A DNA stretch of 64,000 nt, taken from contig NW_013657612.1 in the NCBI RefSeq assembly GCF_000142905.1, forward strand, positions 76,328 through 140,327, in the 5' to 3' direction. A model generated the notes under the pieces. It made no database searches. It was given only the letters and a program-made list of their open reading frames with translations, and was not told the origin of the DNA. A program made the translations under genes and the position numbers. Shown piece by piece: positions 43,547-50,836 of this stretch. The stretch comes from Thecamonas trahens ATCC 50062 (Eukaryota; Protista; Apusomonadida). Position 1 is the first letter of the stretch. Each line of letters begins with the position of its first letter.

Positions 43547-43723
43547 CGCCCAATTCTTGCCTTGATATCGTGTGTACGCGAGCCATCGAACGGCGCTCAC
43601 GTACACGCGGTTCGCCGTGCCAATCGGTACGATGTGCTGGCAAAGATGGTCAGCACAGTAAATGCAAAGAAATCTCAAGTTGTCGCGCCAGCGGAGCGAC
43701 CGCTCGGCCGACAACCGGGAGTG
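43547..43723 (-). repeat. Dispersed 177-bp element, copy B (inverted relative to copy A)
   Basis: Reverse complement aligns without gaps to 30197-30373. Confidence 0.85.
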
Positions 43724-43972
43724 TTACTGTCCGAGATGATCATCGTGGAGCTCAGAGCGGTCAGGTCTGGCGTGGCGGAAAAAGCAAGAAGAATCGAAGA
43801 TCAGCCAAAAAACCGCCCGCCTGGGGTGCACGACGTGATCGGCAACGCAATGTGGTGCTGCTGTGAGGAACAATCGGAAAACATGTGTGACATGTGTGAG
43901 TGTGTTTGTGTGTTGTGAGTGATGGTGACTGTGGCTGAGTTGATGGCGGCGATTTGGCTGTTTCGTTTCTTT

Positions 43973-46509
43973 TCAACGCGACTGCGGCGACGACGACCGC
44001 GATCGCGGGCCGGCGCCGGTCCGTCCGGGCGGCGAAACGGCGCGGACACGCTTCTGCACGTCCGAGGAGACGTACTTGGAGCGGAGCTGGGAGAACTTGG
44101 CCTCCGATGCGGCGCGGTACTCGGCGATGGGGTTCGAAGCTGAGGCAATGGTCGATGCGCCCGGCGCGGCAAACGCGGGGCGGCCGGTACTCATGGCGAG
44201 CGGCGAGATTGAGGCTGACGCTGGCGAGATGAGCTGCGTCGAGGCTTGTGGTGAGAGCGCGCGCGGTGAGGTCGACGCCGGGCCGCCGACCGGCGAGAGG
44301 GACCTGGGCTGGTGCTTGACGACAAAGCCAGTGCCGACAACCGGGCCTGGTGCGGGCGCCAGCTGCGGCGAGAGCGCCGACGGCGACGACGCCCGCGGCG
44401 AGATCCGCGGCGATGTCCGCGCCTTGGCCATCGCCGCGTACTTGCGCCGCAGTTCGTCGGCACGCTCGGCCGCGCTCTTGAACGTCGGTGAGGTGACGGC
44501 AAAGCTCGAGTACGCCAGCGAGGTCTTGGTGGCAAACGCCGACGGGATGGTCGACGTCGACGCAAACTTGAGGCTCGGCACCGAGGCGCGAGCGCCGGCA
44601 CCGGTGGCGGCTTGGGCGGCAGGCGCGGCGTCGGATTTGGCGTCGGCCTCGGCTTCGACCACAATCGCAGCGTCGAGGAGCATGTCCAGCCCGATGGCGC
44701 GCTCAAATGTGTAGACTGGCTCGTAGGCGGCGTCGTCGATGGTGAGCGCGGCGAGGGCGGCAGCCAGCTCGTTGTCGACCGAGGCGGCAGGCGCAGGCAG
44801 CGCGGCAGCAGGCACAGTCAGTGTCGGGACTGTCGGCAGTCGCCAGTCGACTGGTGACAGACCAAAGCCGACCAGAGCAGCGTTGGCGGCCGAGAAACAG
44901 CGCGAGCCAAAGAAACCGCGCGAGGCCGAGAGCGGCGACGGGTGCGGCGTGGCGATGACTGCATGGCGGGCGGTGTCGACCTTGCGGAGCGCCTTTTGCG
45001 CAAATGAGCCCCATGCAAGAAAAACGGCGTGCGGGAGGCGGGCAGCGACGGCGGCGATAGCGGCATGGGTCAGGGCCTCCCACCCGCGGCCTTTGTGCGA
45101 GTTTGCCTTGTGCGCCTCGACGGTGAGGACGGCATTGAGAAGGAGGACGCCGTTGGCGGCCCACGAGGCCAGGAACCCGTGGTCTGGGCAACAAAGCCGT
45201 CAATGTCGTCGGCCAGCTCGCGGTAAATGTTGGCTAGCGACGGCGGGACATTGATGCCCGGCTTGACCGAGAACGACATGCCGTGCGCCTGCCCGTCGTC
45301 GTGGTACGGGTCTTGCCCGAGGATGACGACCCGAACCGCATGCAGCGGCGTGGCGTAAAAGGCCGAGAAGACCTCCTCGCGCGGCGGAAAGACCTGCTTG
45401 CCGGCAGAGACCTCGCTGGCAAGAAAGCTTTCGAGCTCGCGGATGGTCCCGGACTGCAGGACCTCGCGTAGCGCCTCGGCCCACGACGACTCCATCGGCG
45501 GAATGAAGGAGAGGCGGAGCGGCTGGCCAGGCGGGGGCGGCGAGCCGCTAACCGCACCCGGCGCATCCGAGAGCGACGTCCGGGTCTGGACCGCCGGCGC
45601 CCACCAGACCTTGCGGCCCTTGCCGTCCTTGTAGAACTCGCCCTTGTTGTAGATTTGGAGCCAGGCCTCAAACCGGGCTTTGTCCTCATCGCTGCCGTAT
45701 TTGTCGAGTGGCGGGATAGAGTCAAGGACCTCGGCGACTATGGCCCGGAGCTCGCGGCCGAGCACAGCTAGCGCGCCCGTGCCGCTAAGCGCGTCGACCA
45801 GCGGGATGTGCGGATCGAGCTGCAGCCGGTACATCAGCTCGGCGCGGAGGTAGTTGCCCACGCCGTTAAAGTACTTTTGATCGAGCAGGGCGTCCGCGAG
45901 CGGCTTGGCAAACACTGCCGGGCGCTTGGTCTTGGCTAGTGCTGCCGCCACGTGCGCCTCCCACGCCTCGGCCTCGCCGTACGGACACGGCGAGCGGCCG
46001 CTCGACCAGCCATCTTCCACGATGCGGCCCATGTTGAGGGTATCGACGTAGTAGACCGACGCGGACTCGCCCAGAATCATGAGCCGGGTTCCCTGTGGAG
46101 CGCCAGCCTCGCCACCGCCACCGCCATCATGCGCACCAAGCCCTGCACCAGCTCGATCAGCTGGACCATGGCGGACGACGAGCCACTTGCCGACCAGCCC
46201 ATGATTGCAGCGCCAGATAACTGGAGCTTGGTCCTGGCGAGCAACAGGAGGAGCCAGAGCAAAGCTACCCAGAGCACAGGCCGAGGCATGGCTGCTGCTG
46301 CCGGTGGCTGTCGACGCGGCGGTCGCTGGGCGCAGCTCAAGTCGCAGCTCTTTTCCACGGGCACGGGCTGAGAGCGAAAAGGCGGTGAATGGAAGGTTGG
46401 CCGGAGGCACCTTGCCACCGGCTACAGAGACCACACGGGTAAACCGTGTTGTTGCCGGGAGGGCAGAGATGTTCCGTGCATACCGCGCGATCTCAGGCAG
46501 CTCGGGCAT
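43973..46509 (-). CDS. Fusion of a NEIL1-type Fpg/Nei DNA glycosylase and a family-1 uracil-DNA glycosylase (UNG), plus a Ser/Pro/Ala-rich tail. Apparent 1-nt frameshift at about 45187
   Basis: NEIL1: MPELPE, ARGKEL, LLDQKYFNGVGNYLRAE, FEAWLQIY...DGKGRKVWW. UNG in the same ORF: VILGQDPYH, AHGMSFS, PPSLANIY. After adding one C (GCC CCA GAC): HGFLASWAANGVLLLNAVLTV, SHKGRGWE, WGSFA, HPSPLSA, open to the stop at 43973. Confidence 0.88.
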
Positions 46510-46592
46510 GGTCCTGGTCTGCCTGGAGTGCGGTGTGTGCGTGCGTGTGTGTTTGTGTGTAAGAGGCGGGCGGAGTGAGGGGAGAGTTGGGT

Positions 46593-49500
46593 TTACATGG
46601 TCTCTGTCTCGGAGGGCTCGGCGGGTTCGGGGGAGGGCTCGGCGGGCTCGCGGGTAGGTTCCGGATCGGCGATGGGGGCGGTGTCCGTGGCGACGCCAAC
46701 CTTGACCTCAGGCTCGGCGGGCTCGGGGGTAGGTTCCGGATCGGTGATGGGGGCGGTGTCCGTGGCGACGCTAACCTCGACCTCAGGCTCGGCGGGCTCG
46801 GGGGTAGGTTCAGGATCGGCGATGGGGGCGGTGTCTGTGGCGACGCTAACCTCGCCCTCAGGCTCAGCGTCAACCTCAGGCTCAGGCTCTGGCTCAGGCT
46901 CAGCCCCGACCGGCTCGGGGGCGGCGGGAAGCGGCCGCCGGACGATGGCTGAGCGGTGCTCGACATGGATCCATGTGGCAAAGGTCGGCTCGAGGCGGGC
47001 GGTCCGGTCGCCGAGCTGGACAGCGAGGCTGTGCGAGGCGACGTTGTACGAGCCGGGCGAGGAAAAGGCGACGTGGAGGGCGACGGTGGCTGTGGCCCGC
47101 GGCGCGAGATTGATGGCCTTGTTGTGCGCGGCGCCGAGCCACATCCACGGCACCGTGGTGTGGGCCGGGACGAACCGCGCGCTGGCAGGCGTCGCCAGCG
47201 AGAGGTTGGTGATTGTGAGCGTGAGGTCGACCAGGGCGAGCGGCGAGGCGCCAAAGTCGTGGTAGACCCGCTGCTCCGGGCCGAGAAGAACGTGCCGGAC
47301 GATGACGGCCGGGTCGACTGCGCGCGACTCGTCGACCTCGGCGACGTGCTCGCTCGGCGCCGCACCGCTGGCAGCAGGAGTACCTGGGACCCGCGGCAGC
47401 GGGTGCCCAAGCGAGAGCACCGACGCCGGCGGCAGGATCGCCAGGCCATGGATGGTTGGCGGCGGGTTCGGCGCCGCCACGTTCCACGCCACCAGCGCGT
47501 GGACCGAGAGAGGCGCAAAGTGGGTGCTCGCCACATTGCGCGCATGCGAGAGGAAGCCCATAGCTGCAGGCGAGGCCGAGAGCAGACTGCTGGTGTCCGC
47601 GTCCGGCTGCGCCAGCGCCAGTGCCGTGGGCACCGGCACCGCGTCGGCCGCGTCGGGCGCGACCGTCACGTGGTAGTGGAGTGTCACCGAGCCGCGCGAC
47701 GGGACGACCGGCGCCGCCTCGTCGGCGTCGGCACCGCTTGCGCGGGTGAAGCGCATGCCGGCGGCGACAAAGGTGACGTCGGTGACCACAACCGGCGAGC
47801 GGAGCAGGTTGTCGACCGACAGCGCATACAGCAGCGCGGTGGGTGATGCCGGCGAGTCAAGCACATGCCCGCGGCAGCGGAGCGATGGCACCACGTTGGT
47901 AGTAAAGTACAGCCGAGCAAAGCGGTAGAGGCCAGACTCGGTCGCTTCGTCATTTGCCGGTCCGGTGTAGTAGAACAGGACATGGACGTCGCGCGTCCCG
48001 AGATGGCCCGAGAACTTGAGACGGAGCGTGAGCTCGCGCGACTCACCGGGCGCGAGCTCCAAGCCTGCTCCGCTGCCGTCCCCACCACACCCGTCAAAGT
48101 ACATCAGCGAGCCGTCAAAGGCGTCGGTGTGCAAGACGCCCAGCCCCGAGTCCGGCTCAAAGACGGCTGCGCCCGGCACCGAGCACTTTGCGCGCATGTA
48201 ACTGAGCGGGCGCTGCCCGGTGTTGGTCAACCGCAGCGGAATGGTGACAACAGCATGATTGGGGACCGTGGGCGGAGCGACCGGCGCAGTCACACCGTCG
48301 GGCGCAGTGACCGCCAGGCACGGCAGCGGCGGGACGACGTCGAGGGCGAGCCGCGCGTCGGGCGCATAACTGACCGAAGTCCGGTCGGCGACGGTCTTGA
48401 ACAGGCGCGGGCCGCGGCCAGAGAAGGCGACCCGGCCCTCGATGGCCGAGTTGAGCGAGAACCGCAGGCCGGTGAGCGCAAGGTTGCCGACCGAGTTGGG
48501 CACCAGGCTCAGCGTGAGCTTGCGTCGCTCGTTGGCCCCGAGCGTGAGCTCGACCGACGTGGCGGTGTAGGCCTCGGCCGGCGTCGCCGTCAGCCGCAGG
48601 CTCGAGAGCACCAGCTGGACCGCCAGCGGATTGACCAGCTCGAGCTCGACCGCGATGGTCTCGCCGATGACGTGGATGTTGTCGTGGTGCGGGACGGACC
48701 AGGCGTTGTTGCGCGGCGCACCACGGACGGTGCCGGCGCGGAGGAGCTCGTCCTCAAACGAGCGCCACCACGCGTTAGGCGAGGCAAAGTCGTGCGGGGT
48801 GTGAAGAGCGGCAAATGCGTACGCGAGCGCGGCCGGTGGCGGGCGCGAGTACGGCGAGAGCACCCGGAGCGAGGCCTCGTCGAGCCGCGGCAACGGGAGG
48901 TCACGGGCCTCGGGCGCGGCGTCGCCCAGCGCCGAGTTAGCGCCCTGCACCACTCGGATGTAGTTGTTGAGGTAGGTGGCCTGCACGGTCGGCGACTGGA
49001 CCGACGAGGCGAGCATGGGGCCCATGGCATCAACAGAGCCGTCGCGGTCGCCGAGCTTGAACGTCAGCCGGGCCACGTTGTACCGCAGCGTGTCGTGCGA
49101 GCGAAGCCAGCCGGCGGCGGCGGCGCTCTCGATGCGGAGGAGGGTGGTGTAGAGGCGGAGCGCGTGTGAGGCCTGCCCGGCGTCGGCAAAGCGGTTGGCG
49201 GCCATCATGGCGTACATGACAAACTTGCGGAGCTTGGTGGTGGGAAAGACGGCGAGGAAGCAGTGCGCGACTTGCTCGAGCGAGAGCGCAACAAACAGCG
49301 GGTTATTCTGCGACGCCGTCATCTGCATGACGCAGTGGGCTGCCGGAATAAAGGCCCGCCGCTCGCGCCAGAGCTTGTAGTGCAAGTAGAGCGCGCGTTT
49401 GGCGTTGGCGTAGTACCCGGTCTTGTGGTAGATAACAACTGCCGAACCGATCGAGCTGTTGACGTCCTTGTGCGAGGCGTCGTAGAAGAGAGTGGCAAGG

Positions 49501-50836
49501 CCGAGGGCCTCCTGGGCGCCGGCGTAGTACCGCCACGCCGACTCCTTGCGGTACTCGTCGAGCGCGAGCGAGTAGACCGACGCCGCCAGCGGATAGTCTT
49601 GCAGGAGAAAGGCGAGGTCGGCGAGGACTCGGAGCTGCGCGCCCGGCGACTTGTAGTGAAAGATGAACGGCGGGCCTGCGGCGGCGTTGGGCAGCGGGCC
49701 GTCCTTCTCGGGCGACTTGGATGACTTGAACCACTTGGACCACTTGAAGCCCTTACGCGAGACGGCAACCCGTTCGTGGAGCGCGTGGACCTTGCGTCGC
49801 ATAAGCGGCACCAGAAAGTTGACCGCAAAGTTGGTGACAAACTGCGCGAGCGCGTCGATGTCGGCCGGCCCGAGCAGCGCACCGGGTGCAGGTGCGTCGG
49901 CCGGAAAAGCAAAGGTCGATGGGCGGCCGGATGCCCAAAACCGGGGCGGGAGGGCCGGGCCGGCGTCGCCGCCGGTCGACACTCTCACCAGCGCAAAATT
50001 CGACTGCGAGTAGAGCGAGGCCATGCGGGCGTGAACAGTCGCCGGCGTAGTCTCAGGGTTGCCCGAGCATGGCGCCTCCCACTCTTCTTCGTGCAGAATG
50101 AGGCGAAAGGCGGTGAGGTTCGGGTCCATGGCCCCGTTCTCAAACATGGTCGGCGGGACCGACGACGAGTAGAGGCCGGCGAGCGCCTCGATCGGGGTCG
50201 GGTTCCGGGTTGTCGAGACCAGCAGCAACGCCACCGGATGGTCAAACGACTCGTGCTCCGAGCCACGGAGCGCGTCGGCCAGCGTCTGGTGGTACGCATC
50301 GTACCACGGAGTCGGCGAGACGCCTGTCGCGCCCGCCCGGAACTCGCACCGGCGCCCGACGACCCCGCCGCCGACGACAACGGCGCGCTACCGGCTGTTG
50401 CCGACCCGGACGTGCCGGCAGTCATGTATGGGCTCGGAGGCGGGCGCTGGCGAGCAGAAGCGTAGTAGTTGAGGTACGAGGCGACCGAGTCTGGGGTGGA
50501 GAGCTCGGGCGGCGGAGGAACATCGTCGGGCAGGTCAGGCTTGTGCTTGGAGTCGACGCGAGCAGCAAGAAGGTCAGCAAGGGCTTCTGTGGGAAGGGTC
50601 TGCATCCACTCGAGCGGACGAAAGGCAATGCGGAAGTTGTGCATGTCATACGTCTGGCCATTGAGGTTGCCCGTGGTGACGGGACCGGTCAGCGAGGGCA
50701 GGCATGCGCCAAAGGGGGCAAAGAGGTCAGCAAGAGCCAGCGAGGAGGCAGAGGCCAGTGCTTGGGCGTCAAGGGTGGAGAGGACAAGGACCGTAGGCTG
50801 AAAGGTGTTAGTGACCAAGCTGTGGTACGGGTTCAT
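46593..50836 (-). CDS. TRAPPC8: TRAPP III complex subunit Trs85/TRAPPC8. Apparent 1-nt frameshift at about 50338
   Basis: LADLFAPFG, TPWYDAY...SEHESFDHPVALLLVS, QLRVLADLAFLLQDY, WRYYAGAQE, RKFVMYAMMAANRF, VELVNPLAVQL. Confidence 0.88.
46610..46865 (-). repeat. Coding 75-bp tandem repeat, about 3 copies (EPEVxVSVATDTAPIxDPEPTPEPA), at the TRAPPC8 C-terminus
   Basis: Visible in both the translation and the DNA. Confidence 0.85.

What the first reader, a model, noticed from the sequence alone, without database searches (positions are those of the whole stretch)
43973..46509. Two base-excision glycosylases in one polypeptide: NEIL1-UNG fusion
Seen: one ORF runs without a stop from a NEIL1-type Fpg/Nei domain into a family-1 UNG, through a short Pro/Gly linker. 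The NEIL1 part keeps Pro2/Glu3 (MPELPE), Lys in RGKEL, H2TH GVGNYLRAE and a zincless-finger-like GRKVWW. The UNG part has GQDPYH and PPS. The junction needs no correction; one missing C at about 45187 completes UNG (LLLN, HPSPLS) and adds a tail of about 290 low-complexity residues. Established: UNG is monofunctional and leaves an AP site, whereas NEIL1 is a bifunctional beta,delta-lyase acting on oxidised bases and AP sites. They are normally separate genes. Inference: the fusion could pass UNG-made AP sites to the NEIL1 lyase, giving APE1-independent repair of deaminated or oxidised cytosine, which would be useful in a high-GC genome. I do not recall this architecture being described.
Basis: partly seen in the sequence, partly recalled or inferred. 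Interest (0 to 1): 0.85.

Follow-up and report, generated by a model that had tools for sequence, protein, structure and literature searches.

The report
Natural NEIL1-UNG two-glycosylase fusion protein
The protist Thecamonas trahens has one gene that joins a NEIL1-type DNA glycosylase/AP lyase to a uracil-DNA glycosylase, a natural version of the laboratory "USER" enzyme mix that also occurs in amoebae and, built from other parts, in diatoms and bacteria, and that I could not find described in the literature.

Summary
Window 46509..43973 (- strand) is one gene of Thecamonas trahens. It encodes an N-terminal NEIL1-type Fpg/Nei domain (best solved match human NEIL1, E 5.5e-20), a linker of about 32 residues, a complete family-1 UNG and an Ala/Ser/Pro-rich tail of about 289 residues.

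All four sequencing runs laid on the region carry one extra base after 45185, which gives an 845-aa ORF without stops. The public 816-aa model hides the error with a false 86-nt intron (45176..45091) that deletes the UNG core.

The same architecture occurs in Amoebozoa (Pelomyxa, Mastigella, Amoeba, Rhizamoeba, Pyxidicula) and in metagenomes. A diatom joins a mimivirus-Nei1-like domain to UNG, and bacteria join Nth to UNG. The fusion therefore probably arose more than once.

Both catalytic motif sets are intact. The genome also keeps a stand-alone UNG, a stand-alone NEIL1-like gene, three APE/Xth genes and a PNKP-type phosphatase, so the fusion is an extra paralogue.

The most likely function is uracil excision coupled to beta,delta-elimination. 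That is inferred, not shown. Seven literature searches and one review found no description. This scan has not noted it before on other DNA.

The parts
43973..46509 (-). Whole coding sequence of the NEIL1-like/UNG fusion gene. It is 845 codons plus stop once the one base missing from the assembly after 45185 is counted.
   Evidence: The public protein P0001 (Thecamonas trahens 'uracil-DNA glycosylase', 816 aa) is 100% identical outside a false intron.
45589..46509 (-). NEIL1-type Fpg/Nei glycosylase/AP-lyase domain (residues 1 to about 307), with two low-complexity inserts (res 69-86, 121-132).
   Evidence: Best PDB sequence match is human NEIL1, E 5.5e-20. AF2 model has pLDDT 88.2, pTM 0.85. 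The invariant family residues are present.
46492..46509 (-). MPELPE: initiator Met, catalytic Pro2 and Glu3, plus Glu6. This is the first start codon of the ORF.
   Evidence: P2, E3 and E6 are nearly invariant in 60 NEIL1-like sequences.
46345..46359 (-). RGKEL, with Lys53 equivalent to human NEIL1 Lys54.
   Evidence: Aligned ARGKELRL to ARGKELRL with human NEIL1. G52 and K53 are invariant.
45838..45867 (-). H2TH motif NGVGNYLRAE.
   Evidence: Pfam PF06831 E 5e-5, 23.6 bits, below the 34.7-bit cut-off. Aligned to NEIL1 NGIGNYLRAE.
45601..45624 (-). Zincless-finger strand GKGRKVWW, with Arg299 equivalent to human NEIL1 Arg277.
   Evidence: Aligned to HGRTIWF of NEIL1. There is no Cys or His in res 270-320. 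Beta strands lie at 291-294 and 300-303 in the model.
45493..45588 (-). Short Pro/Gly/Ser linker (about 32 residues) between the two catalytic domains.
   Evidence: Contigs of three runs span it (X1 44907-45728, X3 43976-45970, X8 45425-46127).
44843..45492 (-). Family-1 uracil-DNA glycosylase domain (corrected residues 340-556): GQDPYH 45301-45318, GVLLLN 45134-45151, HPSPLS 44927-44944.
   Evidence: NCBIfam ung equivalog halves score 126.8 and 145.1 bits. Pfam UDG E 5e-10 on the C-terminal half. Motif positions.
45185..45188 (-). Site of the assembly error. The homopolymer CCC on the coding strand should be CCCC; one base is missing between 45185 and 45186.
   Evidence: All 4 runs show the inserted base at 100% of depth. 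7 of 9 SNPs of environmental strains are synonymous in the corrected frame, 4 of them downstream of the shift.
45091..45176 (-). False 86-nt GT..AG 'intron' of the public gene model. It really codes for FLASWAANGVLLLNAVLTVEAHKANSHKG.
   Evidence: reconstructs the model. No joint appears in any run, and an RNA-library contig (about 45118 to 45268) reads through the donor site.
43976..44842 (-). Low-complexity C-terminal tail of 289 residues. Two short islands are shared with the marine-metagenome homologue P0002: one around ...YTFERAIGLDMLL (seen by eye) and YRAASEAKFSQLRSKY.
   Evidence: (E 0.002 for the second island). No Pfam family matched.

Best explanation
This is a real, intact, single gene of Thecamonas trahens. 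Its 845-aa product carries two DNA glycosylases of unrelated folds. A NEIL1-type Fpg/Nei enzyme sits at the extreme N-terminus, where its catalytic Pro2 needs a free amino group. A family-1 UNG follows about 32 residues later, and then a disordered tail. Most likely mechanism (inferred): the UNG domain flips out and removes uracil, and possibly 5-hydroxyuracil, leaving an AP site. The tethered Nei domain then forms a Schiff base through Pro2 and cuts the strand by beta,delta-elimination. That leaves a one-nucleotide gap with 3'- and 5'-phosphates, which a PNKP-type phosphatase, a polymerase and a ligase complete. This would be the NEIL/PNKP branch of base excision repair that does not need APE1, and a natural equivalent of the UDG + endonuclease VIII 'USER' mix. 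The Nei domain probably keeps its own activity on oxidised bases. The tail probably recruits partners, as the NEIL1 tail does. Shown: the gene structure, the assembly error, the domain identities, the intact catalytic motifs and the recurrence of the architecture. Inferred: both activities, their coupling and the role of the tail.
For: The ORF is continuous once the missing base is added, and all 4 runs carry that base. Contigs from independent samples span the linker. SNPs are mostly synonymous in the corrected frame. The Nei domain matches human NEIL1 at E 5.5e-20, with K54 and R277 equivalents aligned. P2, E3, E6, K53, N219, R222, E224 and R299 are present. The model is confident. All five UNG motifs are present. 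The same Nei-then-UNG order is found in 34 of 296 fetched proteins: Pelomyxa, Mastigella, Amoeba proteus, Rhizamoeba and Pyxidicula (transcriptome-derived single ORFs), plus a Tara Oceans contig with one uninterrupted 832-aa ORF. UNG is also fused to other AP-lyase glycosylases. A diatom (Corethron) has a mimivirus-Nei1-like domain plus UNG. Many bacterial proteins have Nth plus UNG. The UNG domains fall in three separate clades. The fused Nei clade lacks the Arg118 and Phe120 equivalents. NEIL2 also lacks an Arg118 equivalent and favours AP sites (PMC10711445). A PNKP-type 3'-phosphatase is encoded in the genome.
Against: No enzymology or proteomics exists. RNA support in Thecamonas itself is only low-depth contigs from an environmental metatranscriptome, which could contain DNA. 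The genome keeps a stand-alone UNG, a stand-alone NEIL1-like gene and three APE/Xth genes, so no pathway gap demands the coupling. Linker length is not conserved: about 32 aa here and about 300 aa in amoebae, which argues against a fixed two-headed geometry. The changed void-filling residues could equally mean altered or reduced Nei activity.
Confidence: 0.6

Rival explanations
1. Both domains are active but work independently. The fusion only co-localises or co-regulates two glycosylases that handle damaged cytosine and uracil, for instance by bringing both to replication forks or chromatin through the shared tail. There is no AP-site hand-off.
For: Linker length varies ten-fold between lineages. 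UNG is also fused to photolyase in Deinococcus, which has no lyase logic. The tail has conserved short islands that look like partner-binding motifs. The stand-alone UNG carries a separate PIP-like N-terminus.
Against: UNG's partners in three separate fusions (NEIL1-like, mimivirus-Nei1-like, Nth) are all bifunctional glycosylase/AP lyases. That is more than co-localisation alone predicts.
Confidence: 0.25
2. One of the two domains is a non-catalytic module. Either the Nei domain acts only as an AP-site or DNA-binding clamp, or UNG acts only as a uracil reader.
For: The Arg118 and Phe120 equivalents of NEIL1 are replaced across the fused clade. The same genome has a UNG-like domain with the catalytic Asp changed to Asn, fused to a kinase. 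So pseudo-glycosylase modules do occur here.
Against: In this protein every catalytic residue tested is retained: Pro2, Glu3, Lys53 and Arg299 in Nei; the Asp of GQDPYH, the Asn of LLLN and the His and Leu of HPSPLS in UNG. SNPs indicate purifying selection in both halves.
Confidence: 0.1
3. Artefact or dead gene: a mis-join of two genes, a frameshifted pseudogene, or two proteins made from one locus.
For: The assembly as deposited has a frameshift, and the public model needs an intron to bridge it.
Against: Four runs from at least three independent samples carry the corrected base and span the junctions. No splice joints were seen. Homologues have the same architecture. SNPs are synonymous-biased.
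Confidence: 0.03

Closest known systems
Human NEIL1 (endonuclease VIII-like 1; PDB 1TDH, 5ITQ, 6LWM)
   Same: Catalytic Pro2/Glu3 at the N-terminus, Lys54 equivalent, H2TH motif, zincless finger with the conserved Arg, and a long disordered C-terminal region. It is the best solved-structure match. The nearest unfused relatives are animal 'endonuclease 8-like 1' proteins.
   Different: About 30% identity. Two low-complexity inserts. Among the void-filling residues, Arg118 is replaced by Leu and Phe120 by Met (Met81 to Leu is an ordinary variant) (PMC10164570, PMC10711445). A whole UNG domain follows the core.
Family-1 uracil-DNA glycosylase (human UNG2, E. coli Ung)
   Same: All five signature motifs, and end-to-end coverage of the ung equivalog profiles.
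   Different: It lies inside a larger protein, with no PCNA/RPA-binding N-terminus. The genome's separate UNG has a PIP-like MQSITSFF start. In the tree this UNG domain groups with bacterial-type UNGs (99/95 support), but a single origin with the amoebozoan fused UNGs is not rejected (AU p 0.124).
USER enzyme (commercial mix of UDG and endonuclease VIII; PMC1874603)
   Same: The same two activities in the same order of action: uracil removal, then beta,delta-elimination that leaves a one-nucleotide gap.
   Different: USER is a man-made mixture of two separate E. coli proteins. Here the two are one natural polypeptide, and its activity is untested.
Bacterial Nth-UNG fusions ('uracil-DNA glycosylase/endonuclease III', e.g. 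P0021, P0058 from a Polyangiaceae MAG)
   Same: UNG at the C-terminus of a bifunctional oxidised-pyrimidine glycosylase/AP lyase. Their UNG domains are the nearest relatives of the Thecamonas UNG domain.
   Different: The partner has an HhH-GPD fold (beta-lyase), not the H2TH fold (beta,delta-lyase). They are bacterial. I found no description of them either.
NEIL1/NEIL2-PNKP, APE1-independent base excision repair (my own knowledge of the mammalian pathway)
   Same: The predicted 3'-phosphate product would need a PNKP-type phosphatase, and the genome encodes one.
   Different: In mammals the initiating lesion is an oxidised base handled by NEIL alone. Here uracil would enter the same branch through the tethered UNG.

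Membership tests
Fpg/Nei (H2TH) superfamily, NEIL1 subfamily | Catalytic Pro directly after the initiator Met, followed by Glu | tested here: met
   The ORF starts MPELPE at its first start codon. P2 and E3 are nearly invariant in a 60-sequence alignment.
Fpg/Nei (H2TH) superfamily, NEIL1 subfamily | Conserved Lys of the beta-sandwich domain (hNEIL1 Lys54) | tested here: met
   ARGKELRL is aligned identically to human NEIL1. K53 is invariant.
Fpg/Nei (H2TH) superfamily, NEIL1 subfamily | H2TH DNA-binding motif | tested here: met
   NGVGNYLRAE aligns to NEIL1 NGIGNYLRAE. The Pfam PF06831 hit is only 23.6 bits, below the 34.7 cut-off.
Fpg/Nei (H2TH) superfamily, NEIL1 subfamily | Zincless finger (no Cys4) contributing the conserved Arg (hNEIL1 Arg277) | tested here: met
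   GRKVWW aligns to GRTIWF. There is no Cys or His in res 270-320. A two-strand hairpin is predicted. Clade relatives hit PF09292.
Fpg/Nei (H2TH) superfamily, NEIL1 subfamily | Void-filling residues Met81, Arg118 and Phe120 | tested here: not met
   The sequence reads HGLVGKW and VDTLNMG. Arg118 is replaced by Leu and Phe120 by Met. Met81 is replaced by Leu, which is within the usual Leu/Met range. The whole fused clade shares this pattern (residue roles from PMC10164570, PMC10711445).
Fpg/Nei (H2TH) superfamily, NEIL1 subfamily | Fold match to solved NEIL1 structures | not testable with these tools
Fpg/Nei (H2TH) superfamily, NEIL1 subfamily | Glycosylase and beta,delta-lyase activity | not testable with these tools
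   Needs enzymology.
Family-1 uracil-DNA glycosylase (UNG) | Water-activating loop GQDPYH with catalytic Asp | tested here: met
   Residues 398-403.
Family-1 uracil-DNA glycosylase (UNG) | Uracil-specificity strand LLLN (Asn) and Leu-intercalation loop HPSPLS (His, Leu) | tested here: met
   GVLLLN at 454-459 and HPSPLS at 523-528, in the frame restored by the base seen in all four runs.
Family-1 uracil-DNA glycosylase (UNG) | End-to-end match to curated ung equivalog models | tested here: inconclusive
The two halves cover profile positions 7-112 and 108-226 of NF003589, at 126.8 and 145.1 bits. Each is below the 223-bit cut-off alone, and the rough sum is above it.

The most novel reading that the evidence does not exclude
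Tethering UNG to an AP-lyase glycosylase evolved repeatedly: NEIL1-like in Amoebozoa and apusomonads, mimivirus-Nei1-like in diatoms, Nth in bacteria. Together these would define a natural 'USER-type' short-circuit of base excision repair, in which uracil is turned directly into a phosphate-ended gap without free AP sites and without APE1. In this reading the fused Nei clade, having lost the orphan-base-reading Arg and the Phe wedge, has specialised as the lyase arm of that machine.
Probability: 0.35. Interest if true: 0.75.

Novelty: new variant of a known kind. Interest (0 to 1): 0.6.

Why it matters
How a monofunctional glycosylase hands its toxic AP-site product to the next enzyme is a long-standing question in base excision repair. 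A natural polypeptide that joins UNG to a beta,delta-lyase, recurring in several lineages with different lyase partners, is a ready-made test case for product hand-off. It also gives a possible single-chain 'USER' reagent. It shows that APE1-independent processing of uracil may be a selected pathway in some eukaryotes and bacteria. On the practical side, the public Thecamonas gene model is wrong, because it deletes the UNG core, and the assembly has a homopolymer error at this site.

Tried and rejected
- **Nei tree:** IQ-TREE on 128 Nei rows did not finish. FastTree was used instead, so the Nei tree is weakly supported.
- **Origin of the UNG domain:** the idea that the Thecamonas UNG domain has a separate bacterial-type origin has good branch support (99/95). 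The AU test did not reject one clade with the amoebozoan fused UNGs (p 0.124), so I keep it as a suggestion only.
- **Giant-virus and phage contigs:** Nei and UNG are common there, but no fused ORF was found among the best 80 loci.
- **Literature:** seven searches and a dedicated review of glycosylase domains (PMC9266487) mention no such fusion. The library is not exhaustive.
- **Earlier scan notes:** nothing on this gene.
- **Mis-assembly and pseudogene readings:** rejected on the read evidence.
- **Corrected translation:** the 845-aa reading was built only inside scripts. It was never sent to a search tool; the pieces were searched apart.
Full report
**What is in the sequence.**
On the minus strand, an ORF of 479 codons (46509..45070) begins MPELPE. 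It contains RGKEL, NGVGNYLRAE and GKGRKVWW. After a Pro/Gly/Ser stretch it runs straight into GQDPYH and VPPSL. NCBIfam ung equivalog models match profile positions 7-112 in this frame. They match positions 108-226 in the neighbouring frame (window:43976-45199:-), which then continues for about 285 low-complexity residues to a stop at 43973. So the UNG domain is complete but split by a one-base shift. The shift lies at a CCC run on the coding strand (45186-45188), where one more C would read APDHGFLASWAANGVLLLN.

**The shift is an assembly error.**
I laid four runs on window:43600-46900. They were the 2010 DNA of the same organism (probably the assembly's own source), a 2020 run of the same organism, a 2025 estuary metagenome and a subsurface metatranscriptome.
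- All four show one extra G (+ strand) behind 45185, at 100% of their depth.
- No joints appear anywhere in the stretch.
- With that base the ORF is 845 codons without a stop.
- Nine single-base differences separate the environmental strains from the window. Seven are synonymous third-position changes in the corrected frame, and four of those lie downstream of the shift.
- Contigs from three runs bridge the linker: X1 44907-45728, X3 43976-45970 and X8 45425-46127. A mis-join is therefore excluded.

**The public gene model is wrong.**
The window is Thecamonas trahens ATCC 50062. The public protein 'uracil-DNA glycosylase' (P0001, 816 aa) is identical except that it skips 86 nt (45176..45091, GT..AG). 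That 'intron' removes 29 residues that include the LLLN strand, and it changes APDHG to AQTTG. A contig from the RNA library reads through the supposed donor site unspliced. An earlier scan note (s1-749216, not tested here) says that this genome's real introns use GTACGT donors; this one starts GTTCCT. The intron is a gene-caller's bridge over the assembly error.

**Domain identities.**
- *Nei domain.* Residues 1-320 match human NEIL1 best among solved structures (E 5.5e-20). ARGKELRL aligns to the Lys54 segment and GRKVWW to the Arg277 zincless-finger strand. Mimivirus Nei1 and bacterial Fpg are far weaker matches. In an alignment of 60 NEIL1-like proteins the invariant or near-invariant P2, E3, E6, K53, R172, N219, R222, E224 and R299 are all present.
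- *Predicted structure.* An AlphaFold model is confident (pLDDT 88.2, pTM 0.85), apart from two low-complexity inserts at 69-86 and 121-132. It shows a two-strand hairpin at the zincless finger, and that region has no Cys or His. A structure-database comparison could not be run.
- *UNG domain.* It has all five family-1 motifs: GQDPYH, the Pro-rich loop, LLLN, the Gly-Ser loop and HPSPLS.

**A distinct Nei subfamily.**
The fused proteins and a few unfused relatives share HGLVGxW and D-T-[M/Q/L]-[K/N]-M-G. Other NEIL1-like proteins have GMSGxF and D-x-R-R-F-G at these positions. They correspond to the void-filling residues Met81, Arg118 and Phe120 of human NEIL1 (PMC10164570). Arg118 holds the orphan base, and NEIL2, which lacks an equivalent, favours AP sites (PMC10711445). 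The loss of the Arg and the Phe wedge in the fused clade fits a domain that mainly handles AP sites whatever base lies opposite. That reading is inference.

**Distribution.**
- Sequence searches found the same Nei-then-UNG order in 34 of 296 fetched proteins.
- Named sources are Pelomyxa schiedti, Mastigella eilhardi, Amoeba proteus, Rhizamoeba saxonica and Pyxidicula operculata. All are Amoebozoa, and most come from transcriptome assemblies, meaning single transcripts. The diatom Corethron pennatum is a further source.
- The closest relative is P0002, with 50% identity in Nei and 61% in UNG and the same short linker and long tail. It is one uninterrupted 832-codon ORF on a Tara Oceans contig.
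- Amoebozoan versions have a linker of about 300 residues and end with UNG. The apusomonad type has a linker of about 32-35 residues and a tail of about 300 residues.
- The diatom's Nei part matches mimivirus Nei1 (E 1e-18), not NEIL1.
- Many bacterial proteins join Nth (HhH-GPD) to a C-terminal UNG, and Deinococcus joins photolyase to UNG.

**Trees.**
In a mixture-model tree of UNG domains the amoebozoan fused UNGs form one clade (94/92). The diatom ones form another (97/96). Thecamonas plus P0002 sit inside a bacterial-type clade with the Nth-fused UNGs (99/95). None of 200 bootstrap trees unites all the Nei-fused UNGs. However, an AU test does not reject uniting the amoebozoan and apusomonad UNGs (p 0.124). 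In a FastTree of Nei domains the ten NEIL1-like fused rows fall into one 20-row group (support 90), and the diatom type lies elsewhere. My reading is at least two independent fusions of UNG to a Nei-family enzyme, possibly three, plus the bacterial Nth case.

**Genomic context of the pathway.**
The same genome has:
- a stand-alone canonical UNG (284 bits to TIGR00628) with a PIP-like MQSITSFF start;
- a stand-alone NEIL1-like gene;
- three Xth/APE-type genes;
- a PNKP-type 3'-phosphatase.

The fusion is therefore an additional paralogue, not a replacement. APE1-independent repair is possible but not forced.

**Mechanism.**
The Nei family needs its Pro2 amino group free, which explains why Nei is always the N-terminal partner. 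The likely sequence of events is as follows. UNG removes uracil. The tethered Nei domain attacks the AP site through Pro2 and performs beta,delta-elimination. PNKP, a polymerase and a ligase then finish the repair. This is what the laboratory USER mix does (PMC1874603). The repeated choice of AP-lyase glycosylases as UNG's partner is the main argument for functional coupling. The variable linker length and the presence of all the stand-alone enzymes argue that coupling works by proximity rather than by a rigid two-headed structure.

**Novelty and limits.**
Seven full-text searches and a review devoted to extra domains in glycosylases (PMC9266487) mention no such fusion. Databases label these proteins simply 'uracil-DNA glycosylase'. 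Both domains are well known, so I class this as a new variant of a known kind. Nothing here shows enzyme activity. RNA evidence in Thecamonas itself is thin.

The read-through translation was used only in scripts, and only the separate pieces were searched.

Noticed in passing
L006:1135-3495 (+) = G000:C24, about 160.4-162.7 kb: A 786-aa ORF joins a divergent UNG-like domain (TIGR00628 E 4e-13) to a C-terminal protein kinase (Pfam Pkinase E 5e-44). The UNG-like part reads GQNPYP, so the catalytic Asp is Asn, and also WLNTSLT and HVPS. It may be a pseudo-glycosylase uracil or DNA sensor fused to a kinase.
   Followed up: partly
L001:1183-2541 (-) = G000:C40: Stand-alone canonical UNG of 452 aa. 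Its long N-terminal extension begins with a PIP-box-like MQSITSFF, as in human UNG2.
   Followed up: partly
L007:1165-2346 (-) = G000:C28: Stand-alone NEIL1-like gene (MPEHAEIY..., SRGKELLL, NGIGNYLRAE, ARTVWF; Pfam PF01149, PF06831 and PF09292). It keeps the usual D-M-R-R-L motif and groups nearer to animal NEIL1 than the fused copy does.
   Followed up: partly
P0021, P0058, P0006 (bacterial); P0067, P0070 (Deinococcus): Bacterial proteins fuse endonuclease III (HhH-GPD, N-terminal) to UNG (C-terminal), and Deinococcus proteins fuse photolyase to UNG. At least 21 Nth-UNG clusters were among the best 120 hits. I found no paper on the Nth-UNG fusion.
   Followed up: partly
P0003 residues 381-441: The linker of about 350 residues in one amoebozoan-type fusion has a borderline WGR-domain hit (E 3e-4, 21.2 bits against a 22-bit cut-off). 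WGR is the DNA-break-sensing module of PARP. Amoebozoan linkers also share a repeated helical motif (...F..Y.VD.D..EL.DSF.R).
   Followed up: no
window 43600-43725: Read depth is 5 to 20 times higher than in the gene in three DNA runs, with many loose ends. This looks like a short dispersed repeat just downstream of the gene.
   Followed up: no
window 46510-46595: Only 84 nt separate the stop of the upstream 1213-codon ORF (46593..50234, same strand) from this gene's ATG. The spacer is a CA-rich simple repeat (46528-46565) that the read tool skipped.
   Followed up: no
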